Virus record (IMG/VR): IMGVR_UViG_3300038463_000730
Location: 62,001 to 126,000 of that record
Reading direction: 5' to 3' (one strand)
Length of the DNA: 64,000 bases
Position 1 is the stretch's first letter. The number at the start of each line of letters is the position of its first letter. The notes below the pieces were generated by a model. That model made no database searches, was not told the origin of the DNA, and worked only from the letters and a program-made list of their open reading frames with translations. Made by a program: the position numbers and the translations under genes. This document shows positions 3,821 through 62,500 of this stretch, piece by piece.

Positions 3821-3847
3821 ACCAGCATATATAACGGCTGTTCGGAG

Positions 3848-8169: not shown

Positions 8170-8192
8170 CGCATCGTAATATAACGACTTTA

Positions 8193-12384: not shown

Positions 12385-15300
12385 ATGGCAACGGTCTACC
12401 CAAATCAGTTAGACACCTTGTTAAGTCTCACAGGAAGTGTTCAAGGTGTTCGAGATAGCGTAACTCCAATAAGCGCTACAAATATCAACACGCTAGCTAG
12501 CGCGATGATTCAACTCGAAACCGTTCTAGGTAACGCACATGGACTAGGCGGTGCGCCCCAAAGTATTTACGGCACAGTCGCAAATCGGCTAAATATACTG
12601 GAACAGATCGTCAACCAGGAAAGTGGAGCTGGTAACGTCGTCGTGTTCGGATCTGCCGAAATTGGTCAGACAATCATCTGGAACGGCTCGGTATGGACGC
12701 CTGGAACGAACTTCATCAACCAGAACATCCAAACGTCTGGTGAGTTAGTCTCCGGCCCGGCACTCAGCACGGCCAACACGACCGGTTTGTCTCAGCTCAC
12801 AGGAAAGCTGATTCTTAACGCGATCACACCGTTGAAAATATCCGACCCTAATCAAGGTATCATCTACTTTGATCAGACAGCTGCCCAGTTCTTAGTTTCA
12901 CAAAACGGCGGCTCATACATCCCACTTGTAGCAGGTGGAGGTGGTAATGCGGGTGGAGACCTAGCAGGCCTGTATCCGAACCCTTCTGTAGTTCGACTCT
13001 CCGGCGCAAACGTTCCGATCGGGTCCAGCTTAACCACCGGAAACGTTCTCCAGGTAGACGGGTACAGCTCTCTTACGTACGGGCCAATCAATCTTGGTGG
13101 TGGCGATGGATATGTCGTAGGTATTCTTCCGGCTGAAAATCAGGGAGCACAGACACTAGGTGGTGACCTGTCCGGCACGACCGAAGCGGCATTCGTACTT
13201 GGGCTTCGCGGTATCCCTATCTCGCCAACCAGCCCAAATGCTGACCAAGTGCTTACGTACAACGGAACGTACTGGATTCCATCAGATATCCCGGTTCCAA
13301 CAATCTACCTTTCAGGAGATGTTGTTGGTCCTAACACGGCAACGGTCGTTGAGAACATTAACGGGGCATCTGTACCACCGGCAGGCGGACTTATTACTGG
13401 CAACGTTCTTCAAGTTACCGGATTCGGTAGTTTGGGATACGGCCCGCTCGATTTGAGTGGCGGCTCAGACTATATTACTGGTGTCCTCCCGGCAGCAAAC
13501 CAAGACGCACAATCCATGTTTGGTGATGTCCATGGCAGCACGAACAGTTCGACTGTTATTGCTATCCAAAACATTCCAGTTAACAGCGGCAGTGTTTCGG
13601 TTGGACAAGCGATGTTCGGAACATCATTCAACGAATGGGGTCCGGCAACAATTTCTGGTGACATTATCTCTAGCAACGTGACACCAGGTTTGCTCACGGT
13701 TGGATATTTGCAGGGCAACTATGTACCGGCTGGAGCACTAGTAGAGGGACAGTTTTTTGTTGCAACATCGACGAACAGCTGGGCACCTACTACAATTTCT
13801 GGAGATATCAGCCCTAGTAACACGACCCCTGGTCAGCTTTCTGTTACAGGTATCCAAGGTTACTCGTTCTCGTCCTTTGCTCCCACCAAAGGGCAATTCG
13901 TCGTCGCTACAACGGGCGCAGGTTATGGACCAGTTACAATCAGCGGTGACGTTTCGGAATCTGGCACGATTCCTGGCAAACTTACTGTCTCCGGTATCAC
14001 GGGTGTCACGATCAGCGGTTCTCCGTTAGCGGGTAACGCGATCGTCGCCACGTCCGGAACGGCAGCAAGTTGGTCCAATGTTACGAACATTGGCGGCGTT
14101 ACGATTAGCGGTACTCCGTCAGCCAATCAGGTCATCGTCGCAACATCTAGTACGGCAGCATCGTGGCAAATAAACAGCCCGACCATCAACGGTGTAACGA
14201 TCAGTGGTACTCCGACAACCGGGCAGGTATTGGTTGCACTTACCAGCACGACTGCTGATTGGCAAACCTTCGGTGGAGCGTTCGCTGCGGGCGGAGATTT
14301 GTCCGGCACCTCGTCGTCACAGACTGTTATCAAGATACAGGGCACACCGGTTGTCAACACGGCTCCGACATCAAATCAGTTACTTCAGTACAATGGAACA
14401 AACTGGACACCTACAACAATTACATTGGCTGGTGATGTCACGGGTGGTCTAGCTGCTACCACGGTAACAAAGATTCAGGGACATTCCGTTCTATCGACAG
14501 CACCGTCTACTGGACAGGTTCTAGAATGGAATGGTTCGGCCTGGTCACCATCGAATGTTACAGAGATCCAGGGCTTCCCGGTTTCATCCGCAACACCACA
14601 AAATCAATACACATTGATATGGGATGCAGCAGACGGATACTGGAAGCCAGAGAGTCCGCTCGGCGGACCGCCATCAGGCCCGGCAAGCGGAGACCTCAGT
14701 GGATTCTATCCATATCCGATCGTCACCGGACTTGACGGTTACCAAATTGCATTCGGCGATCTAGGCCCAGACGAACAAGGATGGGTTGTTACATGGTCGT
14801 ATATCGATGGGTACTTCATTCTCGCGACACCGTCAAGCGGACCTCCATCCGGAATGGCCGGTGGAGATCTGTCAAGTGCCTATCCTAATCCGACTGTATC
14901 AAAGATAAATGGCAGCTCCGTTCCAGCCGGTGGTGCGCTAATAACTGGTAACGTTCTACAGGTTACCGGTACATCCGCTCTTGGATATGCTCCGATCAAT
15001 TTGGCCGGTGGTGCAAATTACATCACCGGTCTACTGCCTACTGCTAGCCAAGCTCAACAGACAATGGGTGGTGACCTGACCGGCACGACCGGTAGTGCAA
15101 CGGTCGCCTCGATCCAAGGACACGTTTTCACAACGAGTGGAACGAGCCCTGGTTATTTCATCATCGCGAACTCAACGTTCGGATACCAACCAGTTCAAAT
15201 TACTGGTGATGTTGCGGCTTCTGTTTCGACAATCGGAAAACTATCCGTCAATGCACTTAAAGGAATCACGCTCGGTGGAACGACTCCATCTGCTGGATAC

Positions 15301-18255
15301 ATCCTAACCTCGACATCAAGTACCACGGCAGATTGGGTCAGCCCATCGTCTTTGGGAGGAAGCTTCACAGCCGGTGGAGACTTGAGTGGTAGTAACACGA
15401 GCCAAACGGTTATTGGTCTTCGTAGTCACTCTGTTTCTGCTACAGCTCCGACAACAAATCAAGCATTGATATGGAGCGGTTCGGCATGGACACCGACAAC
15501 GATCACTCTAGCTGGTGATGTTACTGGTGGAACGGGAGCAACAACCGTTACAGCCCTGCGTGGCAACACAATTCAACCTGGCACATTGTCATCTGTTAAC
15601 GATGGTTACGCACTAACTTGGGTTAATGCTGCGTCACAATGGCAACCAAAAGCGATAGTCACTTCGACTATTGATGGTGTATTGGTCAGCGGTGTACCGA
15701 CATTTGGTCAAGTTCTAACCGCAACATCGGCAACAACAGCAGACTGGGAGACTCCAGCATCGGGTGGTCCGGCCGGTGGTGACCTAACAAGCAATTATCC
15801 AAATCCAACAATAGCCAAGATACAGGGTAACGCTGTTCTTACAGGAACACTTGGCCCGGCTCAAGATGGCTATCTTCTCACGTGGGTCAGTGCGTTTAGC
15901 GAATGGCGTGCCGAGCCACCTCCTGGTTCGTTCGTTCCAAGTGGAACGGGCCTCGTACATATCGTCAGCGGAGTAGAGCAACCGGCAGCGTCACTTATTG
16001 TAAATGCTGATGTCGATCCATCTGCTGCGATTGCGTATAGCAAACTTAGTTTGACAGGGGATATCGTAAATAGCGATATCTCTTCTAGTGCCGCAATTGC
16101 GTACAGCAAACTAAATCTAACAGGCGACATCGTTAACACAGATATCGCTACTGCCGCAGCGATTGCAGGAACGAAGATCAATCCAGCTTTCGGTTCACAG
16201 AATATCAGCACGACCGGAACGATCAGTACTGGTTCGGCAACGTTCACAGCGATTAAAGACAGTGGACTCGGCACGGGTGTCGTTCACTCGGACAGCTTTG
16301 GTAACCTAAGCAGTTTTGCTGTCAACCTTTCTGGCAGTGATGTTACGAGCACATTGCCAGTAGAAAATCAGGCTCATCAGATAATGGGTCAGGATGTCAC
16401 CGGAACAACGGCAGCTGCAACGGTTGTCGCGCTTCAGACCAATCCAATTCAATCTGGGATACTCAGTTCGATTCAGGATGGTTATGTACTGACATGGAAC
16501 GGAACGGTGTGGTTGGCTTTGGCTCTTCCGGAGACAAGCGGACCTCCATCCGGACCAGCCGGTGGCGATTTGACCGGTACATATCCTAACCCGACCGTTC
16601 AAGCGATCCAAGGCAATATGATCGAGCCAGGATTATTAACCATTACGCAAGATGGTTATGTTTTGACCTGGAACCACATCGCAAATCAATGGCAACCACA
16701 AGCCATCACAGCTGGTTCAGTCACGTTGGCCGGAGATGTATCGGGACCAGCTACATCGAATACAGTTCACAGCATCAATGGCAGTTCGGTTCCGACCGGT
16801 GGTTCACTCACAATCGGAACATTACTTCAGGTTGTCGGTAGCTCGGCACTATCTTATGCAGCGCTCAATCTTGCCAACTCGAACTCTGTAACCGGCGTTC
16901 TACCAGCAGGTAATCAAGCTGCACAGACATTGACCGGTGACGTTACCGGTTCGACTGCTGCCGATACAATCTCGGCAATCCAGGGTAACCCGGTTCTACT
17001 CGGTACACTCGGGTCTGCCCAAGATGGTTACGTAGCTACATGGAATGGCACTGATATTGTCATGCTACCAGTAACAGCAACTTCTGTTACGATGGGTGGT
17101 GATATCACGGGACCATCAGAAACTAGTACGATATCTAGCATTCAATCGAATCCTGTAGCTTTTGGTACACTCGGACCAGCTCAAGATGGTTATGTTGCGA
17201 CATGGAACGGGACTGAGTTCGTTATGCTTCCGGCGAATGGACCGGAGCCAATCACGACAACCATTTTGAACAATGTTTCTGCTAATGGTGCGTACGGAAC
17301 TCCTCCAACAAACTGGAACGCGAGCTATACGTCTGGCGCAAACTCCGTTATCATCTATGCCGATGCCGGTGGTTATACTGCAAGTGTAGGCGAAGGGCTT
17401 ACACTTACTCTATTCATTGATGGTAGCCCGGTCGTTGCTTCATCTGGATTCTTCAATCAAAGTGGAATTCATGGAGCGTTCCCAAGCATTGCGTTCGGAA
17501 CGACTCTTACAGCCGGAACTCATACGTTCTCGCTTCAAATGACCGGTACTGGAGCGAGTGCCGATGTAAATGACTTTGCATCGATCACGATTACCGAATT
17601 CGTTGGTGGCGGTGTAACGGCTGAATCAGTCTTGTTGGCTGGTGATGTTTACGGTTATTCAAATGCAAATACAGTAAACCGAATCAACGGAGCGAATGTT
17701 CCGGCTGCTGGTTCGCTAACGACTGGTAATCTGTTGCAGGTTATCGGGCCATCCACTCTTACGTACGGCGCTCTCAATTTGGCAGGTGGCTCGAATTTCG
17801 TATCTGGAGTTTTGCCGAACACAAATCAGCAAGCTCAGACTGTCGGTGGAGATCTTAGCGGGACAACGAATGCTGCAACCGTTGCCGCACTTAGTGGCAA
17901 CCTACTTAATCTCGGTACTCTCGGGCCAAGCCAAGACGGATACGTTGTTACATGGAATAGCACCGATAATGCGCTCGAAGCCCTACCGTTGATCACCGGT
18001 AGTGCAACGTTGTTCGGTGACGTAACAGGCCCGATCGCTACAACATTGTTGTCTCAGATTCAAGGTAACCCGATCGACATCGGAATACTCGGACCTAGCG
18101 AAGATGGATACGCTTTGATTTGGAGTAATACTGACTCTATGTTTATCATGGCGCCAGTTACTAACGAGGCATTAGAGCTAGATGGCGATGTTTCAGGCAC
18201 ACTTGAGAATAATACTGTCGGGTTCCGCAAAATGTTCTTATTGATGGGTGCGTAA
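12385..18255 (+). CDS. very long repetitive tail-fibre shaft protein (1956 aa)
   Basis: About 25 G-D-[LVI]-x-G...TV..IQG...P..GQ/DGYVLTWNG..W.P repeats; three 22-aa IVNxDxxxxAAIAYSKL repeats; MATVYPNQLD N-terminal anchor; ends FLLMGA. Confidence 0.8.
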   Translation: MATVYPNQLDTLLSLTGSVQGVRDSVTPISATNINTLASAMIQLETVLGNAHGLGGAPQSIYGTVANRLNILEQIVNQESGAGNVVVFGSAEIGQTIIWNGSVWTPGTNFINQNIQTSGELVSGPALSTANTTGLSQLTGKLILNAITPLKISDPNQGIIYFDQTAAQFLVSQNGGSYIPLVAGGGGNAGGDLAGLYPNPSVVRLSGANVPIGSSLTTGNVLQVDGYSSLTYGPINLGGGDGYVVGILPAENQGAQTLGGDLSGTTEAAFVLGLRGIPISPTSPNADQVLTYNGTYWIPSDIPVPTIYLSGDVVGPNTATVVENINGASVPPAGGLITGNVLQVTGFGSLGYGPLDLSGGSDYITGVLPAANQDAQSMFGDVHGSTNSSTVIAIQNIPVNSGSVSVGQAMFGTSFNEWGPATISGDIISSNVTPGLLTVGYLQGNYVPAGALVEGQFFVATSTNSWAPTTISGDISPSNTTPGQLSVTGIQGYSFSSFAPTKGQFVVATTGAGYGPVTISGDVSESGTIPGKLTVSGITGVTISGSPLAGNAIVATSGTAASWSNVTNIGGVTISGTPSANQVIVATSSTAASWQINSPTINGVTISGTPTTGQVLVALTSTTADWQTFGGAFAAGGDLSGTSSSQTVIKIQGTPVVNTAPTSNQLLQYNGTNWTPTTITLAGDVTGGLAATTVTKIQGHSVLSTAPSTGQVLEWNGSAWSPSNVTEIQGFPVSSATPQNQYTLIWDAADGYWKPESPLGGPPSGPASGDLSGFYPYPIVTGLDGYQIAFGDLGPDEQGWVVTWSYIDGYFILATPSSGPPSGMAGGDLSSAYPNPTVSKINGSSVPAGGALITGNVLQVTGTSALGYAPINLAGGANYITGLLPTASQAQQTMGGDLTGTTGSATVASIQGHVFTTSGTSPGYFIIANSTFGYQPVQITGDVAASVSTIGKLSVNALKGITLGGTTPSAGYILTSTSSTTADWVSPSSLGGSFTAGGDLSGSNTSQTVIGLRSHSVSATAPTTNQALIWSGSAWTPTTITLAGDVTGGTGATTVTALRGNTIQPGTLSSVNDGYALTWVNAASQWQPKAIVTSTIDGVLVSGVPTFGQVLTATSATTADWETPASGGPAGGDLTSNYPNPTIAKIQGNAVLTGTLGPAQDGYLLTWVSAFSEWRAEPPPGSFVPSGTGLVHIVSGVEQPAASLIVNADVDPSAAIAYSKLSLTGDIVNSDISSSAAIAYSKLNLTGDIVNTDIATAAAIAGTKINPAFGSQNISTTGTISTGSATFTAIKDSGLGTGVVHSDSFGNLSSFAVNLSGSDVTSTLPVENQAHQIMGQDVTGTTAAATVVALQTNPIQSGILSSIQDGYVLTWNGTVWLALALPETSGPPSGPAGGDLTGTYPNPTVQAIQGNMIEPGLLTITQDGYVLTWNHIANQWQPQAITAGSVTLAGDVSGPATSNTVHSINGSSVPTGGSLTIGTLLQVVGSSALSYAALNLANSNSVTGVLPAGNQAAQTLTGDVTGSTAADTISAIQGNPVLLGTLGSAQDGYVATWNGTDIVMLPVTATSVTMGGDITGPSETSTISSIQSNPVAFGTLGPAQDGYVATWNGTEFVMLPANGPEPITTTILNNVSANGAYGTPPTNWNASYTSGANSVIIYADAGGYTASVGEGLTLTLFIDGSPVVASSGFFNQSGIHGAFPSIAFGTTLTAGTHTFSLQMTGTGASADVNDFASITITEFVGGGVTAESVLLAGDVYGYSNANTVNRINGANVPAAGSLTTGNLLQVIGPSTLTYGALNLAGGSNFVSGVLPNTNQQAQTVGGDLSGTTNAATVAALSGNLLNLGTLGPSQDGYVVTWNSTDNALEALPLITGSATLFGDVTGPIATTLLSQIQGNPIDIGILGPSEDGYALIWSNTDSMFIMAPVTNEALELDGDVSGTLENNTVGFRKMFLLMGA
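15997..16180 (+). repeat. three tandem 66-bp (22-aa) coding repeats
   Basis: IVNADVDPSAAIAYSKLSLTGD / IVNSDISSSAAIAYSKLNLTGD / IVNTDIATAAAIAGTKI. Confidence 0.8.
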
Positions 18256-27089: not shown

Positions 27090-27914
27090 TCAGAACTTAA
27101 GTTCTCGTCCGATCGTATCGTCATTGCGTAAAGTCATGATTTCGACGTGGTCTTCGTGAATCATAATGGTATGCTCGAAGTGCGCCCCGATATCATCCGT
27201 CGTGATCGTCCAACCATCCCGGCCTACATGCGTTCGTGGAACACCGGCTGTCAGCATCGGCTCGATAGCCAGCGTCATCCCGGTTTGCATCACGACACCC
27301 TCTTCGATCCCGGCACGATTCGGAACGAACGGTGCAGCGTGTGGCTTATTCTCCTCCAGGCCATGTCCGCCGTATTCCGTAATGACTCCGAATCCGGCAT
27401 CACGAGCGTATCGGTAAATTGCGTTCCCAATCACGCCAATACGACGTCCAGGAGCTACCATCTGTATTCCTGCATAAAGCGAAAGACGAGCCACGGAAAC
27501 AAGCTTCCTTTCTTCTTCTTTCCTCGGTTGTCCGAAGATAGCCGTACAAGCAGAGTCAGCAATCGCCGCCATGAAGGTCGCCCCAAGATCGAATTTAACG
27601 ACGTCTCCCTCTTGAAGCCTATAATCTTTAGGAATCCCATGTACAATCTCCTTGTTAATAGAAATACAAACGGCTTCAGGAAAGCCTTTGTAGTTCTTAA
27701 AGGTAGGTGTACACTTGTTATCTAGGATGATCTGCTCAGCCTCACGACTGAGTTCGAGCATCGTTTTAGTTGTTCCGGACTCAACTCGTTTCAAAAGATG
27801 AGTCAAGGTATCGGCTACGACTTTTCCGGCGTGACGTTGATTCTGGATCCAATCCGCCCCTTTCAAAACGATAAGTGATGATTGGGGCGTTCGTGATTGG
27901 CTTACGACTTTCAT
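27090..27914 (-). CDS. map: type I methionine aminopeptidase
   Basis: CISINKEIVHGIP, KFDLGA...ADSA, YGGHG, AIEPM, AHFEHT: all metal ligands present. Confidence 0.95.
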   Translation of the reverse strand: MKVVSQSRTPQSSLIVLKGADWIQNQRHAGKVVADTLTHLLKRVESGTTKTMLELSREAEQIILDNKCTPTFKNYKGFPEAVCISINKEIVHGIPKDYRLQEGDVVKFDLGATFMAAIADSACTAIFGQPRKEEERKLVSVARLSLYAGIQMVAPGRRIGVIGNAIYRYARDAGFGVITEYGGHGLEENKPHAAPFVPNRAGIEEGVVMQTGMTLAIEPMLTAGVPRTHVGRDGWTITTDDIGAHFEHTIMIHEDHVEIMTLRNDDTIGRELKF

Positions 27915-27934: not shown

Positions 27935-28654
27935 TTACGGAGTCGAGCTACGGGACACAACTCCACGACGTTTCTTCGCGATAATGATTCCGGTTGGCTC
28001 GGCCGCTGGTGCCTCGGCCTCGGCTGCCTGAGCCGCTTGCAATTCAGCAACTTCGGCCTGCAACTTTGCTTGCTTCGCAGCGCGCATTGCATCGACCAAT
28101 GCATTTGGTAGCTCGTGTTCGCTATCCAAATCCAATCCATCGCCCTGGCCATCATCTTCGCCAATTTGTGTATCGTCACCGACCGATTGCGTGAAATCAT
28201 GAGGACGATTCAGTTCCGTAGCGAACGTTTCTCCCGAGATCACGACCGAACCATTACGGTTCACAATCGGTGCTGGTCCGGCATTAGGTTTAGGTCCCTG
28301 AAGCAATCCGGCCTTACGAGCAGCCTCGATGATTGCTAAGCTCTTCGTATAGTCATCCTCTGATGAGCTAACCGTCATCGAACGAGTCGATTCATTTGAG
28401 ACACTCTTGATCGGCTGTGGACGTGATACTGGTTTTACCATTGTTTCGGCAACAGTCTTTCCAACTGAAAAATTGTGGATTTGCTCCACTGCGCCACTCG
28501 CATTTGACACGATCAATACATCGATCTTTGCTACAAGGGCATTAACCTCTCGAATCTGATCCTTACGGATACCGGCAAAGAACCCATTGGAAGCATCGAA
28601 CAAATATCGACGCAATGTGATCAGATTATTAAGCTCACTTAGTGGGATTGACAT
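27935..28654 (-). CDS. hypothetical protein, largely disordered C-terminus
   Basis: 239-aa ORF in the operon. Confidence 0.7.
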   Translation of the reverse strand: MSIPLSELNNLITLRRYLFDASNGFFAGIRKDQIREVNALVAKIDVLIVSNASGAVEQIHNFSVGKTVAETMVKPVSRPQPIKSVSNESTRSMTVSSSEDDYTKSLAIIEAARKAGLLQGPKPNAGPAPIVNRNGSVVISGETFATELNRPHDFTQSVGDDTQIGEDDGQGDGLDLDSEHELPNALVDAMRAAKQAKLQAEVAELQAAQAAEAEAPAAEPTGIIIAKKRRGVVSRSSTP

Positions 28655-28997
28655 TTACATTTCCTCTTACGATGGCGCCTTCTTGGCTAATTGAATCAGA
28701 TTTGGTTAGACCATACTGCATGAATAGCTGCATGATCAGGTTCTTATACTGCAACTCCGCAACCTCAGCATCGGAGGTTGCCTTATCAGCAATAGCCTTT
28801 GCTAAGTTACGTTTGTTGTTCTGACGCTCCAACATCTGAACCTCAGCATCACTCAATCTCGAAGGCAGATCGGTAGGCGTGACGGTTGGACTGGGCGCTG
28901 GCGGCGGGACGGTCGAAACTGTTGGGACGGGCGCCGGTACGACACTTGGTGTCGGTGCTGGCGCGCTTGGTGGAACACTCTGAACTGGATCACTCAT
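28635..28997 (-). CDS. hypothetical protein (Pro-rich N-terminus, coiled coil)
   Basis: 120-aa ORF with GGAG RBS. Confidence 0.75.
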   Translation of the reverse strand: MSDPVQSVPPSAPAPTPSVVPAPVPTVSTVPPPAPSPTVTPTDLPSRLSDAEVQMLERQNNKRNLAKAIADKATSDAEVAELQYKNLIMQLFMQYGLTKSDSISQEGAIVRGNVNVNPTK

Positions 28998-29040
28998 GTT
29001 GTTAACTCCGTTGAATCTTCATATAACGGAGTTAACAACA
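28997..29040 (-). promoter_or_regulatory. perfect 16-bp inverted repeat sequestering the RBS
   Basis: TGTTGTTAACTCCGTT (28997-29012) / AACGGAGTTAACAACA (29025-29040), 12-nt loop. Confidence 0.8.
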
Positions 29041-29054
29041 GTTGATACGAATTC

Positions 29055-30350
29055 TTACAAAATCGTAGCGGCTTCCGTTGCCAATGGTGATCTTTCACCC
29101 TTGCTGAATGTAACATGCCCTGACAATTCTGACTTTCTGAACTTCTCAACAACGTATGTTAATCCGTTATTTATTGCGTCTAGGTTTTGGGAGTCGATCT
29201 GCTCGATATCTCCCGTTAACACAATCTTTGTCCCATGACCGGCTCTCGTCAAAATAGTCTTTACTTCATCCTTAGAAAGGTTCTGGCATTCATCGATGAT
29301 AATCATCGCGTTCGGAATTGAACGACCACGAATGTACGTAAGAGCATTCATCTCGATACGTCCTTTTTCGCAGTACATGTCCATCATAACTTGCCATTTC
29401 TCTTTTGACTTCGAGCTGAACAAATACTCAAAGCTGTCCATCACGGCTCCCATCCATGGCTCAAGCTTTTCGCTCAATGAACCAGGAAGATAACCGATAT
29501 CATTCCCCATCGGTTGAATCGGGCGGTACACAATCAGCTTGTCGAACTTCTTGCGCTCTAGCACCATTTCTAGTGCCGCTCCGACGCTGATCAATGTCTT
29601 GCCCGAACCTGCCAAACCGATCAGGCTGACTAATGGTAGCTTCGGATCTAAAAGCATATTGATGGCGTACGATTGCTCACGGTTACGAGCCTCCAGACCC
29701 CATGGATTCTGGTTCTGAATGACGCGCAAACGGTCGCCGATGCGGCGTCCAATCGCGATGCCGAGGCCCGATTCATCGTTGATCTGAACACATTCATTTG
29801 GCTGAATCTGGAGCTTACTTCCTTGCAAGTCAAAGAAGCCCGTGTCTCGTAACGTAACACCCATCTTCGTATCGACGATAGTCTGGTAGCCAGTATACAG
29901 ATCGGTAAGGTTTGATGAACCCTTCTCGTAGTTTTGCGAACCCAATCCGATTGCTTTCGCACGGATTCGCAGGTTAATGTCGCGGCTTACCAATACGGTT
30001 TCGCGATCTTTGAATTTCAATCGATACGCTTGGGCACATGCCAAGATCTTGTTATCACCGTAGCTCGCGTCATCTCCAACACGTACAACGTGTGTCTTGG
30101 AGTCGATGCGAAGGTTGATATTTCCGTCCAAACGAATTGGCTTCGTGACGTTTGCTGTGGCGCAGATCGCGTCTAGCAAACGAATTGTCACACGAGCATT
30201 TTTGCCAGCGGCATTCGATAGCTTTTTAATCTTATCGAGTTCGTCTAGGACCGTGATCGGTATGATCACGTCCGACCCCTTGAATTCCTTGATGGCTTGT
30301 GGGTCATGTGCGAAAACAGATGTATCGATTACGTAATTTTTTCTAGGCAT
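29055..30350 (-). CDS. phoH: PIN-PhoH (PhoH2/YlaK-type) ATPase
   Basis: PIN: VIDTSVF, ELD, DNKIL, VSRDINLR; PhoH: GLAGSGKT, GYLPG, YIRGRS, IIDECQN, LTGDIEQID. Confidence 0.93.
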   Translation of the reverse strand: MPRKNYVIDTSVFAHDPQAIKEFKGSDVIIPITVLDELDKIKKLSNAAGKNARVTIRLLDAICATANVTKPIRLDGNINLRIDSKTHVVRVGDDASYGDNKILACAQAYRLKFKDRETVLVSRDINLRIRAKAIGLGSQNYEKGSSNLTDLYTGYQTIVDTKMGVTLRDTGFFDLQGSKLQIQPNECVQINDESGLGIAIGRRIGDRLRVIQNQNPWGLEARNREQSYAINMLLDPKLPLVSLIGLAGSGKTLISVGAALEMVLERKKFDKLIVYRPIQPMGNDIGYLPGSLSEKLEPWMGAVMDSFEYLFSSKSKEKWQVMMDMYCEKGRIEMNALTYIRGRSIPNAMIIIDECQNLSKDEVKTILTRAGHGTKIVLTGDIEQIDSQNLDAINNGLTYVVEKFRKSELSGHVTFSKGERSPLATEAATIL

Positions 30351-30368: not shown

Positions 30369-30752
30369 TTACTTCAGATCGGGGTTTCCATTAGGTTCTT
30401 CAAAAACAGAAGAACATGTGACGCGCATTTCTAAATAGATTTTCTTTCTCGGATCGACCTGTGAAGCGTCGATCTTTCGAACATATTTCGGTTTACTCCA
30501 TTCTGCGATCTTTTTTCGCGCTGAATATATCTCTAACGCACCATCGACGGACTCGACAATAATCAACTCTTGCTCAAGCAGTAATGCTCGCAGTTTGATC
30601 TTTGTTTCTACTGACAGTATCGATTCCTCAGGTGGCCAGAATTCCGGATGAATATCCATTGCTTCTAATATTGATCGAATGAATTCTGCTTTTTGCTCAC
30701 CTTCACATTGCTTTAAGTCAGCAGTGGAATCGAGTAAGACTGTATACGTCAT
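30369..30752 (-). CDS. hypothetical protein
   Basis: 127-aa ORF. Confidence 0.7.
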   Translation of the reverse strand: MTYTVLLDSTADLKQCEGEQKAEFIRSILEAMDIHPEFWPPEESILSVETKIKLRALLLEQELIIVESVDGALEIYSARKKIAEWSKPKYVRKIDASQVDPRKKIYLEMRVTCSSVFEEPNGNPDLK

Positions 30753-30788: not shown

Positions 30789-30815
30789 AAAAACAAAAAG
30801 CCCGCATAAGCGGGC
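30789..30815 (-). terminator. rho-independent terminator
   Basis: Minus strand GCCCGC-TTAT-GCGGGC followed by TTTTTGTTTTT, 4 nt after the stop of 30820..31164. Confidence 0.85.
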
Positions 30816-30819
30816 CGGT

Positions 30820-34156: not shown

Positions 34157-34780
34157 TTATAGTTTGATATTCTCCCGGATAACGCCAAGTGCCGAGTTGA
34201 TCGTCTTCATGCACGATGGCCGGGAGAGATTCTTACGTTTGCAGATCTTGTTTATCGACAAGGGCTTGTCCCCTGTAAAACCGAAAGCGAGTGACACGAC
34301 CTCGCGCTGATCTGTACTGAGATCCTTCATGGCGATCTCGACTGCCCGCTTGAGTTGGTCGTCCTCCAAGATTACATCCGGATTGAAACGCGGCTCGATC
34401 ATAATCGGCATAGTCGATTCTTTATGAGGAGGAGTATTCTTCGCGAACTTCAAAGGATACCGAATTGTTGTATGTAGATTAGCTGACCGACTAATCCTCG
34501 TGTCAATATATTTGTGGACCCACCAAAAGAAATTACCTTTGTTGGGATTGTAATTATTCATCGCTTTCAACAACGCCTCATAACCCTCCTGCATTAAGTC
34601 TTCGTGATTACTGAAACCTTTGTACTTGTTCGTACGCATCGTAACGAGGTACCGGAACTTCTCCATACATAGTGTTTCTAGCCTTTGTAGCTCAAATTTG
34701 CATTTTGGGTCTGACTTCGCTTTTTTTCTGAGTCGAACAAACTCAGACATTAATTGTTGGGCTTCCTGATGTGATATCAT
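34157..34780 (-). CDS. sigma-70-family RNA polymerase sigma factor
   Basis: Region 2 EDLMQEGYEALLKAMNNYNPNKG.F.WW; region 4 LSTDQREVVSLAFG...HTH. Confidence 0.9.
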   Translation of the reverse strand: MISHQEAQQLMSEFVRLRKKAKSDPKCKFELQRLETLCMEKFRYLVTMRTNKYKGFSNHEDLMQEGYEALLKAMNNYNPNKGNFFWWVHKYIDTRISRSANLHTTIRYPLKFAKNTPPHKESTMPIMIEPRFNPDVILEDDQLKRAVEIAMKDLSTDQREVVSLAFGFTGDKPLSINKICKRKNLSRPSCMKTINSALGVIRENIKL

Positions 34781-43964: not shown

Positions 43965-44001
43965 ACCAACCTATATAACGAACCGTTGCTTCCGTTACTC
44001 G

Positions 44002-52582: not shown

Positions 52583-52606
52583 GCACGAACATATATCAGT
52601 TCCAGA

Positions 52607-56550: not shown

Positions 56551-59500
56551 TTAGGGTTCCTCATATGTAATCGTAGCTCGCGAAACGGCTGGCTTTAGGG
56601 TATTTATCAGTGTTTCTAGAACAGATTGCACATCTTTGCTTCCACTAACAATGCCAAATGAATCAATGATATTGATCGAAAAATCGAAGATGCCGAAATT
56701 CTCGTTTTTGAGCAAAGCGTAGTTTGTATTTAGCTTCTGCACGGTATTGAAATCCAGCAAATAGGTCGTATAAAGGTCCGTTGTGACCGGGAATGTCGCG
56801 GCAACGTTCGCGTTATAGTTGACATCAATCGGTACGCCGAACGCTATGAATGGCTGTCTCATGATATCGCTAATGCGTAAATTATCGATTAAACAGTTAC
56901 CAATATTCTTCCCATTATAGTCTGATCCAATATTGAACTGGTTTACTTGATCAGTTGTTTTGATCGATGTAAAGATGGCGCTCTGGCCAACGAAAGACTG
57001 GCCAAAAACGATATTCTGACCGAATAGCAATCCCTGACCGTACAACACGTTTCCATGCTCAAACCCATCTACAAAGAGGTGGATCTGGTCATTCGTGCCG
57101 CCTGAGTTGACGGTCCAAGTTGCCTTGACGCGGTGCCATGTTCCGGCTTGCCAGAAAATAGGAGTCCTGACCTGATAGTCATTGCCAGCTCCACGAATAT
57201 CGAACGTCAAATACCCGTACGGGTCCTTGTAGATGCTGAGTCGATCGCCTTTCAATCCGTTCGGAATGTAAGTTACGATCACAGGAGTCTGCTCATTTGG
57301 CAGCGGGTCGGACAGATTGATTGTCTGCAAGTCAGAACTGACCGAACCTTGTCCACCGTAGTAGTTGTAGCTCTGATTTCCGTACTGAAGAGTGACCGAC
57401 ACAACCGTTCCGATCAATCCGGCAACCTGCACGGTCGCACGGTTCGTGCTGCTAACCTGTTCCGTTATGATACCTGAGGCATCGAAATAGAATCGGTAGA
57501 CTGGGTCGTTGTATGTATCGATGAACGGATTGGCCCAGAACTCGATCGAGCCTGGAGTTCTGGTGTTCAGAAGGCCGAGGTTGTCCACGGTCATCGGTTG
57601 TTTATCCAAGATCACGCTCTGACCGAAATTCGGATTCACACTGGAACCATACTGAAGCAACGAACGATCTGCGTTGATGTAGAACGGAGCCGAGTTGGCA
57701 GCCGTGGCATCATTCATTGTCAACAACGTGAGTGTGTTTTTCGAAATCGGCGGAGGATTGATCGAGTTGAACAGTTGGGTGACCGAGCCAGTCATCGGGT
57801 TGACCGCTTCACCGACACGGGTATCGGACAACATGATCGAATCGATCCGTACCTGGTCAACAATCGCATTGATCTGGTGGCTTCCAGACAAGTCCGAACC
57901 AATATAGGTTGACTTCATCAACGGATCGAACTTTGCAGCAAGATACGTTGCATAGGTGAACTGATACGTTCCCTGTGTCAACAGGTACGGTTGTCCAGGT
58001 GTTGGTGCGTTTTCGAAGAAGAACGTTCCGTTCTGAAGTCCGTTTCGAACAGTGGTTGTGTTGAGGATTTCGTATGGAATAGCGTTTGGGTATGCCGGTG
58101 GACTAGCCTTTGTTCCAAGGAATGTTGCTGGGAATGGCGTAGCAACGGTCAAGTTGTTATTGTCCTGCACAGATACAATTTTGTAGTATCCAGCGGCAGC
58201 ACCAGCATTCATCCCTGGAAAAATGTGAATGTAATTTCCAACATCAATCGGAGTAAACAATGCATTAGTATCAGTAAAGGTTGTCTGCCCGATCGTTCCT
58301 TCTGGAGTATTGCCCCAGAAGACCTGGTAGCTGTATTGGATGACAGGATAGTTTGGGCTCGATTCCGACACGGTCAAGTAATCTGTTTCGAACACAGTCA
58401 ACACGAATGCATTCTGATTCAGGTTGATCGGATTGTACTCGGCTGTGATCGAACTGACGCAGAGGAACATCGTTCCGGTATCGAGTGTCTCTTCACCAGT
58501 GAAGGTGAGTGGCACGGATTCATAACCCGTCGATGTTAATCCATCGATCGTAACGGTTACAGGGAATGTGACATTCGTTCCAGCCAGCCGTACTGATAGT
58601 TTCCGGCCCGGATCTCCACGTCCAACGTTCGAACAGCTTGTGTACCCATCGAAGTTTGTTGCGGTCCACAAATAGTAACCGTCATTAACCGACTGCGATG
58701 GATAGACTGCGGTCTCGGTCATGAGAAACTTCGTAATCTTGACATCCGACAAACTCACCGGAGGTGGCAACACGGTCTGCAAGAAATTCTGACAGTTGCC
58801 CCAAGCGTAGTAACGCTGGGTCACGTATTTGAAGTTCAATCCGAGCGGCTTGATCAGTAATGTATCTCCGGCCTCGGCGCCATTCGATAGAATAATCTGG
58901 TTGTAGCCATCACTTTCCGTAATCTCGTAATACGGAAACAATGCGCGGGGTCCAGGGATCTCCGTTTCAACTCCAGAGCGCAGAACCGTAACAGCAATGT
59001 TTTTGTAAAGATCAATTCTGGTCTTTACATCAATCGTGAGCTGGTTCACAGAGTAGTTTACCGATGTCAAACTCAATGGCATCGAGGCACTCAAAGTCAG
59101 TTGGTTACCATTTACGTTAGTAATGGTGTAGTATGTATCGAAGCCAATCTCCTGAATGTACAGTTTATCATTGACCTCAATTCCAGCGGCATCGAAGCTC
59201 TGTCCTGCCGTTACGATGGCCGAGCCAGCAATCGTGACCATGTCATCGCCTGCTGTGATGGGGCGCGTAATGACTGAGACAATTTCCTCCGGGTTCGGCG
59301 TGCGGAACCGCTGTCCGAAATTGATCGGAATCTTCGTTCCATAACGAATGAGATTCGGAACCTCCAACCCGTCGATAAACAGGTGGATCTCGTCCTGGCT
59401 TGACTGAGAGTTCAAGGTCCACGATGTTGCAACGAAGTGAGGTTGGTTCGATATCCAATTGCTTACGTCCGCGCTGACCTGGTATTGAGCCCGATTGTTA

Positions 59501-62500
59501 TCGATGACGCGGAAGTTGAGGTACCCTGCCGGGTCCTTGTAAATCGAGATTCGGTTACGATCCGGGACATCTCCCACATCGAGCAAGTAGTGGAAGTAGT
59601 CAGCAACGAAACAAAATCCCTGATGAACCGATGTATCGTTGAACACGGCTCGGTTACCAGCGCTGGTAATAGAAGCGTACCCATCACTCGGGTACATATA
59701 CTTCGCATCAAACAACTCACCATCGGTTGTCATCGTGATAGAGTACGCAAGATCGGTATCGTTGACCACGTCAACGTACCAGCGATTATAGCTACCGTAG
59801 CCATCAGGGCACAGGTAGATGAACACGCCTTCTTTATGTTTGTTCGGTTTACCAAGTGGCGAAATTGGTCCACGTTTCGAAACAGTGAAGAACTGATTTC
59901 CAAGTGTATCTGTCTTGTAAACAGGGTGAACTTCGCCCGCACCAATAAAGACCCGGCTCTCGTTGACGAATGCCCCGTTTGCACGAATGATGAATGTCAG
60001 TTCTGAATCATTGTCGATTCCGTTCCATTGAGGAAGAATCCACGATGAGAACGTTCCTTCATCGATACTGATACGCGAACATGTTGGAACGACGACGTTC
60101 TGTCCCGGCCCCTGCAAGAGCAGTCCGTTGTCGTACTTGGCAGGCAACACTTGCGGGTTGTTGTTGACCTGTGGAGGCTCGGGATACAGGAATGCGCTAC
60201 CGAGTGACCATAGCTCGAAGATGCTTTCTTCAATCTGTGGCGGCACCTGTGTGATGGTCTGAACCATGTTAGTCATCGCACCGATCGTCGGTCCCTTCGG
60301 GAGCGACCCCATCGCCGCAATTAAACAGTTACGATAGTTCTCGCGGTCAAACGTATCATCGAATACGCTGAGCAATGGAATGTTGATCAGGGTTCCGAAG
60401 TTCTTCAGCAACGCATCACGCAATGCTCCAACCTTGTACGTAACGTAGTATTGGTCGCCTGCCGATATCGAAGCTGAGTTACGGAAGTCTAGATAGTTGT
60501 CTCCGTACTCGTAGTCAACGATGATCTGATCTGCCAGGTAAGTGTAGTCGAGGTAGTAACCGCCCTTGTCGTAGTCCAGCACGACACGGGAACCTGATGT
60601 AATTGTTGCCGTTACGGTCACGATCACGTTGTCACCGTTCTGCGGAGAACCGGTTCCGGCCAGTGTCAACACAATCGGATTGCCAATAGCATACGAACTG
60701 TAACCTAGTACAGCGTTGTCAGATAGCCTGGTCAACGTGAACGTCAACGAGATGTTCGGAGACAAGTAAGTCAGATCGAACCCAGTGTTCAAGAAGTATT
60801 GGCTACCTACCTTGTTGACCACTTGCAAACTCGATACAACCAACGGGCTCATATTGACCGAGTGATCAAGGAACGTTGTTGCCGAAGCGAAATTGATCGG
60901 GCTAGGATTAAACAGAAGGTCGTTGAACTCGAAGGCTGAGCGCATAGCTCCGACCGAGCTGGAGATACCTGGAGTAAACACGGCGTTCATGAAGACACCG
61001 ACTGCTCCACCGACCAAGAAGTATGGGAAAAGCGGATTGTTGTTCAGAATCTTCTCGTCTGACAAGTCGAACGTCGATGGAAGAATCGAACCATCGGTAA
61101 AGCTTGTATACGTAAAGGTCTCGTTCGCCGGTTGAGACATACTGATCTTGTAATAGATATTGAGTGGCGCGATAACATGTGGGAACTGTGGAATTATCTC
61201 TGGCCCACGGTACGAAACAGTCCCTATATCTTGGCTCTGGTCCGTGGTAACGGCGACATAAATAACACCGTCAACATAATCAACCATGTACTGGCCAACA
61301 GCTGTCAATCGAACAAGATTGTTTACCTGTGTATCATCCGCATCGAAATAGACTTCGCGCTGGAAGACCGATGACATCGATGGAACCAAACTCGTGTTGA
61401 CAGATGACCCGATACAGTCTTCCGTAGCCGAAATGATATTGTTGTTTTGCAGATCGATCTGGAAAATAGTCTGACCGTTGTTTATCGTTTGATTGATAAA
61501 CAGTGTTTCATTTAGGATTTGCTGAAACGCGGCGCGTTCTTCAGTCTGGGTCGGAATATCGGGTGGTGAAGGGAAGGTGAAGAAGACGAGGTCATTCTCC
61601 CAGCGAGTAACGGTGTAGGCCTGGCCCTGTGTTTCGTTGAAGATACGGAACACATCCGTGACCGGGCTATTCTGGACACGCAATGCATTCAAGTTTGGAA
61701 TAATCTGGTTGTTGATATTCTCAGCCAACACCTCAACGTGAACGTCAGCAACGTAGTCAATGTTCGGCACGAACACATCTTCAAAAGCAAATGCGATGTT
61801 CGCGCCCGTTCCGATCAACTGACTTGTTGGGAGCGCTACCAAATCAGCCGTATCGGTCGCGTAGACGTAATCGATAAGAGGTTGGAACGTATAGAGATAG
61901 TTGTACGTGGCTAACGGAGGGAAGGGACCGGTGCCATTGTTTGAACGGTCTGCACCATAGACGTAAACTGTTCCAGTGGTGTAATCGACCGAGTACTCTC
62001 CTGGATTGGAAGGAAGTTCTTGAAACGAAAACTGTAGTTCGGTCTTGAACGCCGGGTGAACGGCCGAGAGCGCCGGATTGGCATTTGGATCAAGGAACTG
62101 AACGCCTTTCAATGTCAGCGCATTTCCATTCTGATCAACAATTGGAGAATTTTTGAGGTTGAAAATGTTCTCGATCGATGGAACGACTTCTCGTACCGAT
62201 GGAATCACTTTCGTTACCGTTACAGAGACCGGGTTGACGTTTCTCCCTAGATTCTTGTACTCATAGTTCGCTACGATGTACGCAATGTTCGTAATGCTAA
62301 AGTTCGCATCTGTCAAAACGATATCGTTCAAACGAAACTGATTGCTGGCTAACGTTGCATACGGCGACGCATCCTGCGTATCGTATCTGGCATCAAGAAC
62401 TTGGTATCCCAAACCAGCTAGGTTGTACTGGTAGAACGTGCTACCATTTGGCAGAAGCCCATTGTAGAAGAACGTCAAACTTGTCAGTACAATTACGTTC

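What the first reader, a model, noticed from the sequence alone, without database searches (positions are those of the whole stretch)
28997..29040. Perfect 16-bp hairpin hides the RBS, with the promoter-like motif at its loop: a transcript-dependent translation switch
On read-through mRNA from phoH, the stem pairs the GGAG RBS and the A of the ATG of gene 28635-28997. CGTTATAT lies at the 5'-arm/loop boundary, so a transcript started from it would lack the 5' arm and expose the RBS. Established: T4 uses this logic for genes such as e, soc and I-TevI. It implies that the unknown 120-aa product must be tightly timed.
Basis: partly seen in the sequence, partly recalled or inferred. Interest (0 to 1): 0.65.

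Follow-up and report, generated by a model that had tools for sequence, protein, structure and literature searches.

The report
Promoter-in-hairpin translation switch, huge phage
In a 435-kb uncultivated peat phage, a conserved RNA hairpin after the phoH gene buries the ribosome-binding site of the next gene, and a promoter-like motif inside the hairpin would make a shorter, translatable message, which is the trick phage T4 uses for its lysozyme gene.

Summary
On the minus strand, 29040-29025 pairs perfectly (16 bp, 12-nt loop) with 29012-28997, covering GGAG and the A of the ATG. It is the longest perfect hairpin in the 434,688-bp genome (0.002 expected by chance).

- **Structure.** On read-through RNA the ribosome site costs about 22 kcal/mol to open. 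On RNA started in the loop it costs about 4.
- **Motif.** CGTTATAT belongs to a genome-wide motif, YGWTATAT. Forty of 61 copies lie 5-45 nt upstream of an ORF start on the same strand, 23 of them at 7-9 nt. Permuted controls give 31 of 313 and 3. Several copies directly follow intrinsic terminators. The phage encodes its own sigma factor.
- **Conservation.** Eight syntenic relatives (PhoH 58-88% identical where measured) all keep GTTATAT and GGAG. Five of them also keep a strong stem around an anti-SD:SD core, with compensatory changes, sense-strand G-U wobbles and loops of 12 to 58 nt. In every one the motif lies 3' of the anti-SD.

The T4-type switch is therefore well supported by sequence and comparison. 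No start site or translation data exist, because no RNA runs were found. It is a new member of a known kind. The regulated protein, conserved in all nine lineages, has no recognisable function.

The parts
29055..30350 (-). Upstream gene: PIN + PhoH (PhoH2-type) protein, 431 aa. Its transcript would read into the hairpin.
   Evidence: Pfam PIN_4 4.5e-29 and PhoH 2.7e-45. No terminator-like site lies between its stop and the next gene.
29025..29040 (-). 5' arm of the hairpin. It contains the anti-SD CTCC at 29031-29028.
   Evidence: Sequence, fold. The core CTCCG is invariant in six lineages.
29021..29028 (-). Promoter-like motif CGTTATAT, a member of the genome-wide YGWTATAT family resembling an extended -10. 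It straddles the arm/loop boundary.
   Evidence: GTTATAT is kept at this position in all eight syntenic relatives.
29013..29024 (-). Loop, 12 nt. Its 3' part differs between relatives.
29012..29016 (-). Predicted transcription start zone, 5-9 nt after TATAT. This is an inference and has not been mapped.
   Evidence: Inferred from the fixed 8-nt spacing between TATAT and ATG at 19 other genes, with a G-rich position 6-7.
28997..29012 (-). 3' arm of the hairpin. It contains the Shine-Dalgarno GGAG (29009-29006) and the A of the start codon.
   Evidence: GGAG lies 7-9 nt before the ATG in the six strong-stem lineages.
28635..28997 (-). Regulated gene, 120 aa. The protein has a disordered Pro-rich N-terminus, one long helix (residues 50-95) and a small beta hairpin. 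Function unknown.
   Evidence: ORF. Orthologues in nine lineages. AF2 model mean pLDDT 74. No Pfam or PHROG family.
27935..28654 (-). Next gene, 239 aa, unknown. It overlaps the end of the 120-aa gene by 20 nt and is probably translationally coupled.
   Evidence: The order small gene, second gene, M24 peptidase is kept in relatives.
27090..27914 (-). M24 metallopeptidase (methionine aminopeptidase type), in the same tightly packed gene string.
   Evidence: Pfam Peptidase_M24 8.2e-37.
30799..30816 (-). Intrinsic terminator (GC-rich stem plus T-run) that marks the upstream boundary of the phoH transcription unit.
34157..34780 (-). Phage-encoded sigma factor, 207 aa. It is a candidate reader of the TATAT promoters, but this link is not shown.
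   Evidence: PF04542 27.6 bits, over the cut-off. phrog_351 1.1e-16. Weak region 4 match.

Best explanation
This is a transcript-dependent translational switch of the T4 gene e / I-TevI type.

RNA that starts upstream, in the unit bounded by the terminator at 30816-30799 that carries gene 30369-30752 and phoH, runs past the phoH stop with no terminator in the way. It folds the 16-bp hairpin. The anti-SD CTCC(G) in the 5' arm pairs with the GGAG of the 120-aa gene, and the stem closes over the A of the AUG. Ribosomes therefore cannot start on this long RNA.

A -10-type promoter element (CGTTATAT, family YGWTATAT) sits at the arm/loop boundary. RNA polymerase starting there is expected to begin about 5-9 nt downstream, around 29016-29012. 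That gives a leader of roughly 15-19 nt that keeps the 3' arm with the SD but none of the anti-SD, and is therefore translatable. The 120-aa protein would then be made only when that promoter fires. The tightly packed genes behind it would probably follow through coupling.

Shown: the structure, its uniqueness in the genome, the gene-start association of the motif, and conservation with covariation.
Inferred: the start site, read-through, the translational effect, and which sigma reads the motif.
For: **Structure**
- Perfect 16-bp stem covering the SD and the A of the AUG.
- Opening the ribosome site costs 22.2-22.7 kcal/mol on long leaders and 4.2-4.3 on leaders starting at 29016 or 29012.
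- It ranks 2nd of 526 SD-bearing candidate starts (median 7.2, 95th percentile 13.9). The 1st is a spurious start inside a terminator.

**Promoter**
- TATAT lies exactly 8 nt before an ORF-opening ATG at 19 genes, against about 2.1 at other spacings (Poisson 1.6e-12). The consensus is YCGWTATAT, with G at -2 in 18 of 19, and there is no -35 element.
- Of 61 YGWTATAT sites, 40 lie 5-45 nt upstream of an ORF start on the same strand. Nine permuted-core controls give 31 of 313.
- Several copies directly follow GC-rich, T-run terminators.
- Leadered copies with an SD also exist.
- The phage has its own sigma factor.

**Read-through**
- No terminator-like site lies between phoH and the stem, and no T-run follows the stem.

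**Conservation**
- Eight syntenic relatives, with PhoH 58-88% identical in the seven where it could be measured, all keep GTTATAT and the SD.
- Six lineages, counting the window, keep the core CTCCG paired with C/U-GGAG and covarying outer pairs: AT/GC, TA/AT, GC/TA/AT.
- There are 7 G-U wobbles and no A-C inside the helices, read from the table.
- Loops are 12 nt in four lineages and much longer in L006 and L008 (58 nt between the paired cores, against 16 in the others).
- The motif always lies 3' of the anti-SD.
- The long leader costs more to open than the short one in 9 of 9 lineages, and by 6-21 kcal/mol in seven.

**Precedent**: PMC3014915 and PMC2988022.
Against: - There is no RNA evidence at all. 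No RNA run holds this phage, and the contigs that were laid gave no ends or variants.
- The promoter role of the motif rests on position statistics. Its reader (host sigma-70 with an extended -10, or the phage sigma) and its timing are unknown.
- Genes carrying the motif include a glycosyltransferase and an oxidoreductase-like protein. It cannot be called a 'late' promoter.
- The promoter of the phoH unit was not identified.
- Three more distant relatives (L010-L012) keep the motif and the SD but only weak stems, with a cost difference of 1.5-8 kcal/mol. Strong sequestration is therefore a trait of part of the lineage.
- This is the only such hairpin in the genome, unlike T4 where the device recurs.
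Confidence: 0.62

Rival explanations
1. The hairpin is an RNA processing or stability element. It is cut by host RNase III or another double-strand nuclease, or it serves as a 3' protective stem for phoH mRNA. Translation of the 120-aa gene is then unlocked by cleavage rather than by a second start site. The TATAT motif inside it is either incidental or a second, independent feature.
For: The stem directly follows the phoH stop. Stems in L006 and L008 are longer and carry extra internal structure, which resembles phage intercistronic processing sites. Cleavage in the loop or stem would also free the SD.
Against: Sixteen base pairs is short for a classical RNase III substrate (general knowledge). 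No phage RNase III gene was found. The conserved core of the stem is specifically anti-SD:SD, not any stable helix. GTTATAT is invariant at this site in all nine lineages, including those with weak stems, and behaves as a promoter elsewhere in the genome.
Confidence: 0.13
2. The hairpin is a constitutive translational damper. It simply keeps output of the 120-aa gene low on all transcripts. The motif is not an active promoter at this site.
For: The structure alone explains strong repression. As an 8-mer the motif is not enriched. Two of its 14 genomic copies fall in tRNA genes and three inside ORFs.
Against: A stem costing 22 kcal/mol would nearly silence a gene that is conserved in nine lineages. 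The motif is invariant while the rest of the loop drifts. In L006 the motif has moved away from the arm yet is retained 3' of it. That is expected for a promoter but not for a passive stem.
Confidence: 0.1
3. The element acts at the DNA level. The inverted repeat is an operator for a dimeric repressor that overlaps the promoter, or it forms a cruciform. It is not an RNA structure.
For: A perfect palindrome flanks a promoter-like motif. Symmetric half-sites could also evolve together.
Against: Across lineages there are seven G-T pairs and no A-C pairs inside the helices. This keeps pairing only in sense-strand RNA and breaks DNA symmetry. The gap between the arms ranges from 12 nt to several times that in L006 and L008 (58 nt between the paired cores, against 16 in the others), which a dimer operator would not tolerate. 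L001 has a one-base bulge. The arm always contains the SD.
Confidence: 0.05
4. The hairpin is a cis substrate of the neighbouring PIN-PhoH protein, an RNA helicase fused to an RNase. That protein unwinds or cuts the stem and so licenses translation of the downstream genes once PhoH2 has accumulated.
For: The PhoH2 gene and the structured junction stay adjacent in all nine lineages. Mycobacterial PhoH2 unwinds and degrades structured RNA (PMC7390352).
Against: There is no direct evidence. The published preferred pentamer occurs at the ATG in only three of six strong-stem lineages (window, L001, L004), read by eye from the sequences, which is compatible with chance. Adjacency is explained as well by simple operon order. 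The embedded promoter already explains how the gene is expressed.
Confidence: 0.05

Closest known systems
T4 gene e (lysozyme) leader: early read-through RNA sequesters the RBS, and late promoters inside the structure give translatable RNA
   Same: A stem buries the SD and AUG on long transcripts. A -10-only promoter lies in the DNA that encodes the 5' strand or loop, so the short transcript lacks the inhibitory arm. The arrangement is conserved in relatives (PMC3014915; here).
   Different: The phage lineage is unrelated: a 435-kb peat phage with no DNA match and no 120-aa protein match in the phage collection. The motif differs, YGWTATAT instead of TATAAATA. The regulated gene is a small helical protein of unknown function, not a lysin. 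It occurs once in the genome. Nothing here has been tested experimentally.
T4 I-TevI / I-TevII / I-TevIII, segB and Aeh1 mobE hairpins (homing endonuclease genes)
   Same: The architecture is the same: an RBS about 8 nt from the AUG sequestered by a very stable stem, with a late promoter placed so that late RNA cannot form it (PMC2988022).
   Different: Those genes are mobile endonucleases embedded in host genes or introns. Here the gene is a conserved syntenic core gene between phoH and an M24 peptidase, with no nuclease domain.
Intrinsic (rho-independent) terminators of this same genome
   Same: It is an intergenic stem-loop just after a stop codon, and a TATAT promoter is associated with it.
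   Different: The genome's terminators are GC-rich 11-15-bp stems with short loops followed by a T-run, and the promoter lies after them. This stem is 38% GC, has no T-run, contains the promoter and overlaps the next gene's SD and AUG.

Membership tests
T4-type promoter-within-hairpin translational switch | A stable RNA helix sequesters the Shine-Dalgarno sequence and/or the start codon of the regulated gene | tested here: met
   A 16-bp perfect stem covers GGAG and the A of the AUG. P(unpaired) of the SD is 0.000 on long leaders and the opening cost is about 22 kcal/mol.
T4-type promoter-within-hairpin translational switch | A promoter lies within or after the 5' strand, so its transcript cannot form the helix | tested here: inconclusive
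   The motif position is met. CGTTATAT is at 29028-29021, and its family is gene-start associated (40 of 61 against 31 of 313 for controls) with a fixed 8-nt spacing at 19 genes. The start site itself could not be mapped because no RNA runs were found.
T4-type promoter-within-hairpin translational switch | Longer transcripts from upstream promoters run through the region | tested here: inconclusive
   No terminator-like site lies between the terminator at 30816-30799 and the hairpin, and no T-run follows the stem. There is no RNA evidence.
T4-type promoter-within-hairpin translational switch | Translation differs between long and short transcripts | not testable with these tools
   Only predicted energies are available: 22 against 4 kcal/mol here, and the long leader costs more in 9 of 9 lineages.
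Conserved structured RNA (covariation criterion) | Base pairs are kept through compensatory changes in relatives | tested here: met
   Six lineages were compared in a manual register. Outer pairs vary as AT/GC, AT/GC/GT, TA/AT, TA/GT/AT and GC/TA/AT. There are 7 G-U and 0 A-C inside the helices. RNAalifold found 4 of 14 pairs with double changes despite a partly misaligned row. The sample is small, so no formal significance is claimed.
Intrinsic terminator | A GC-rich stem immediately followed by a U-tract | tested here: not met
   The stem has 6 GC pairs of 16. The downstream sequence is the coding start with no T-run. The terminator scan did not call it.
Any Rfam family | A match at the gathering score | tested here: not met
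   The best matches are 19.5 and 15.5 bits, against gathering scores of 93 and 117.
Sigma-70-type extended -10 promoter | A TGn plus TATAAT-like hexamer, with transcription starting 6-8 nt downstream | tested here: inconclusive
   The consensus YCGWTATAT has G at -2 in 18 of 19 sites, so it is TGn-like only in part because C is commoner than T. There is no -35 element. The spacing fits a start at or just before the ATG. The polymerase and sigma are unknown.

The most novel reading that the evidence does not exclude
The hairpin is more than a passive switch. It is the dedicated cis substrate of the adjacent PIN-PhoH RNA helicase/RNase. The pairing of phoH2 with the structured junction, conserved in nine huge-phage lineages, would then be a self-timed relay: PhoH2 made from the long RNA opens or cuts the stem and licenses the downstream operon. 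This would give phage PhoH, a very common phage gene with no assigned role, its first defined RNA target.
Probability: 0.05. Interest if true: 0.75.

Novelty: new member of a known kind. Interest (0 to 1): 0.45.

Why it matters
The T4 device of a promoter inside an RBS-sequestering hairpin appears to have arisen, or been kept, in a very distant lineage of uncultivated huge phages from peat. Its conservation with covariation there argues that it is selected.

Checking it also yields a working promoter consensus for this phage, YGWTATAT with no -35 element. About 40 candidate promoters fit it, and more than half sit 7-9 nt from the ATG, which implies leaderless or nearly leaderless mRNAs. It also supplies a corrected start for a conserved small gene. 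Both are useful for annotating genomes of this kind.

The regulatory logic itself is not new.

Tried and rejected
**Searches that found nothing**
- Megablast of the region and tblastn of the 120-aa protein against the phage collection.
- The search for related loci with the protein or its alignment in viral and metagenome contigs, and a DNA pattern scan of metagenome contigs. Relatives came instead from the word-indexed protein search and contig look-ups.
- The genome search 'relatives' and 'handles' are not available for this virus record or for L006.
- Sequencing runs: only DNA contigs from peat metagenomes, none recorded as RNA. Laying four of them gave identical low-depth fragments with no variants, ends or joints.
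- Pfam, PHROGs and the Atlas feature and structure look-alikes gave no family for the 120-aa protein. I did not run a fold search on what is essentially a single-helix model.
- No RNase III, multisubunit RNAP or T7-like RNAP gene was found. The T7-like control rang nowhere, so that negative result is uninformative.

**Methods that did not work**
- MAFFT-based RNAalifold misaligned the long-loop relatives. I counted pairs in a manual register anchored on the conserved core instead.

**Ideas rejected**
- The two motif copies next to or inside tRNA genes are most likely chance, because the tRNA 5' ends overlap the motif.
- Translational coupling through a ribosome terminating at the phoH stop. 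The stop-to-stem gap is 14 nt here and differs widely among relatives (sequences), so this is not a conserved feature.
- The PhoH2 preferred pentamer at the ATG is not conserved across lineages.

Full report
**1. The observation**

Read on the minus strand, 29040-29025 is the exact reverse complement of 29012-28997, giving a 16-bp stem with a 12-nt loop (29024-29013). GGAG lies at 29009-29006, 8 nt before the ATG at 28997-28995, and the A of the ATG is the last paired base. CGTTATAT (29028-29021) straddles the boundary between the 5' arm and the loop. The stop codon of the upstream PIN+PhoH gene is at 29057-29055.

- The isolated hairpin folds at -22.7 kcal/mol.
- A 96-nt context folds at -29.9 kcal/mol with z = -4.75, and none of 200 shuffles folds as well.
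- In the whole 434,688-bp genome it is the only perfect stem of 16 bp or more with a loop of 3-20 nt. About 0.0018 are expected by chance.
- It is not a repeat element, because no 12-mer of it recurs.
- It matches no Rfam family.

**2. The genome**

The record is a complete-looking 435-kb virus genome from peat metagenomes. It has 48% GC, 24 tRNA genes and no close relative in the phage collection. It encodes a sigma factor at window 34157-34780 (PF04542 over the cut-off; phrog_351 1.1e-16). No multisubunit RNA polymerase was found.

**3. Is CGTTATAT promoter-like?**

As a bare 8-mer it is not enriched: 14 copies in the genome and 4 in the window against 2 expected. Its placement is striking, though.

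- Eight of the 14 copies sit 8-9 nt upstream of an ATG that opens a long ORF on the same strand. Two more, this one included, sit 20-23 nt upstream of an ATG preceded by an SD.
- More generally, TATAT lies exactly 8 nt before an ORF-opening ATG at 19 genes. Other spacings give about 2.1 (Poisson 1.6e-12).
- The aligned sites give YCGWTATAT, then five variable bases, then GGY, then ATG. G is present at -2 in 18 of 19 sites, and no -35 box appears.
- Of 61 YGWTATAT sites, 40 lie 5-45 nt upstream of an ORF start on the same strand, 23 of them at 7-9 nt. Nine controls with permuted cores give 31 of 313 and 3.
- Several copies directly follow textbook GC-rich, T-run terminators, for example at genome positions 291091, 220496 and 299032. 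A new start of transcription is needed at such places.

I therefore read the motif as a -10-type promoter element, partly resembling an extended -10. The start site is expected about 5-9 nt downstream. Most of its genes would then have leaderless or nearly leaderless mRNAs, and a minority, this one included, a short leader with an SD. Whether host sigma-70 or the phage sigma reads it, and when, is unknown. The motif-bearing genes I checked include a glycosyltransferase and an oxidoreductase-like protein, so I do not call it 'late'.

**4. Consequence for this gene**

No terminator-like site lies between the strong terminator at 30816-30799 and the hairpin, and the stem is not followed by a T-run. 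RNA of the unit carrying gene 30369-30752 and phoH should therefore run into the hairpin.

- On such RNA the SD is paired with probability 1.000. Opening 29012-28991 costs 22.2-22.7 kcal/mol.
- On RNA starting at 29016 or 29012 the cost is 4.2-4.3 kcal/mol.
- Among 526 SD-bearing candidate starts in the genome, this is the second most sequestered (22.8; median 7.2; 95th percentile 13.9). The first is a false start inside a terminator.

The device is thus unique in this genome.

**5. Relatives**

The 120-aa protein has two close homologues (60-70% identity). The PhoH protein led to six further syntenic lineages. The gene order PhoH, small gene, second gene, M24 peptidase is kept in every relative whose contig reaches that far.

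All eight relatives keep GTTATAT upstream of the small gene, together with an SD. The window and five relatives (L001, L002, L004, L006, L008) keep a strong stem. Its invariant core is CTCCG paired with CGGAG, or UGGAG in L001. The flanks covary:

- first outer pair: AT or GC
- second: AT, GC or GU
- third: TA or AT
- fourth: TA, GU or AT
- fifth: GC, TA or AT

Inside the helices there are 7 G-U pairs and no A-C. L001 has a one-base bulge. In L006 and L008 the loop is much longer (58 nt between the paired cores, against 16 nt in the other four, whose loops proper are 12 nt). These features fit a sense-strand RNA helix. They do not fit a DNA operator or a cruciform.

In L006 the motif has separated from the arm and lies in the loop. 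In L008 it is inside the 5' arm. In every case it lies 3' of the anti-SD, so RNA started from it lacks CTCC.

| Locus | Long-leader cost (kcal/mol) | Short-leader cost (kcal/mol) |
|---|---|---|
| window | 21.6 | 4.3 |
| L001 | 22.6 | 3.4 |
| L002 | 21.9 | 3.3 |
| L004 | 12.0 | 5.9 |
| L006 | 17.7 | 7.6 |
| L008 | 23.3 | 2.1 |
| L010 | 7.6 | 6.1 |
| L011 | 9.9 | 2.0 |
| L012 | 8.1 | 3.7 |

The promoter and the SD are the oldest parts of the arrangement. Strong sequestration characterises the closer part of the lineage. With six strong-stem lineages the covariation is clear to the eye, but the sample is too small for a formal test. MAFFT and RNAalifold misplace the long-loop sequences.

**6. 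The regulated gene**

The ATG at 28997 is the true start. It carries the conserved SD and stem in all lineages, and the variable N-terminal part stays open, with indels that keep the frame. A public gene call starts at Met55 and gives only 66 aa.

The protein has a disordered Pro/Ser/Thr/Val-rich N-terminus, one long confident helix (residues 50-95, pLDDT above 90) and a small beta hairpin. No Pfam or PHROG family matches, and the Atlas look-alikes were not informative. Its end overlaps the next gene by 20 nt, and the following genes are tightly packed. The switch may therefore gate a small operon.

**7. Comparison with what is known**

The logic is that of T4 genes e, soc, 49 and I-TevI. On early read-through RNA the SD and/or the AUG sit in a helix. 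Late promoters just upstream of the RBS give RNA that lacks the 5' strand (PMC3014915). The same applies to I-TevII, I-TevIII, segB and Aeh1 mobE (PMC2988022).

The differences here are the phage lineage, the promoter motif, the kind of gene regulated, the single occurrence in the genome and the complete lack of experiments.

[quoted passage not shown] 'Must be tightly timed' is therefore a hypothesis and does not follow from the structure.

**8. Rivals**

- A processing or stability stem.
- A constitutive damper.
- A DNA operator.
- A substrate for the neighbouring PIN-PhoH helicase/RNase, whose mycobacterial relatives unwind and degrade structured RNA (PMC7390352).

The invariance of the motif, the anti-SD:SD core, the G-U pattern and the variable loop length favour the switch. 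None of the rivals is excluded without RNA data.

**9. Verdict**

It is a new member of a known kind. My confidence in the full mechanism is about 0.6. Confidence that the stem is a selected RNA structure sequestering the RBS is higher, about 0.85. Confidence that the motif is a promoter element is about 0.75.

Noticed in passing
Genome-wide. In the window: 3829-3836, 8179-8186, 43973-43980 and 52591-52598, all on the minus strand: The promoter-like motif YGWTATAT sits a fixed 7-9 nt before the ATG of about 23 genes, with GGY just before the ATG and no Shine-Dalgarno sequence. This implies leaderless or 1-3-nt-leader mRNAs in a 435-kb phage. About 17 further copies have short leaders with an SD.
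   Followed up: partly
window 34157-34780 (-): A phage-encoded sigma factor of 207 aa, with region 2 over the Pfam cut-off, a weak region 4 match and phrog_351. A second ORF containing region 4 lies at genome 216260-216355 and has its own TATAT-N9-ATG promoter.
   Followed up: partly
window 28635-28997 (-): A public gene call for this ORF starts at Met55 and gives 66 aa. The conserved SD, stem and ATG in nine lineages indicate the 120-aa start.
   Followed up: yes
window 30369-30752 (-): A conserved small gene of 123-130 aa with no family always lies directly upstream of the PIN-PhoH gene. This recalls the short phoAT gene co-transcribed with mycobacterial phoH2. Homology was not tested.
   Followed up: no
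genome 374731-374804 and 373599-374678 (outside the window): ARAGORN calls a tRNA with anticodon CUA, the amber-suppressor type, which it labels Pyl. It also calls three odd tRNA-like genes with two-base anticodon calls. ORFs in the window are long under table 11, so no recoding is evident.
   Followed up: no
L001:1-3821 and L006:5929-6618: Mobile elements differ between relatives. The ribonucleotide reductase of L001 carries an intein with an HNH domain and is 1289 aa, against 833 aa in the window. L006 and L007 have a LAGLIDADG endonuclease gene inserted after the M24 peptidase gene.
   Followed up: no
L013:3871-3925: In a non-syntenic phage contig with a more distant PhoH (59% identical), the gene after phoH is also preceded by a long stem that buries GGAGG and the ATG. 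No TATAT motif is present.
   Followed up: no
window 12385-18255 (+) and 56551-63246 (-): Giant ORFs of 1956 and 2231 aa with almost no family matches. The only hit is a sub-threshold Laminin_G_3 match near the C-terminus of the larger one.
   Followed up: no
whole record: The same sequence lies in a 502,994-bp public metagenome contig, while the virus record is 434,688 bp and is classed as a 'provirus'. The extra ~68 kb was not examined.
   Followed up: no
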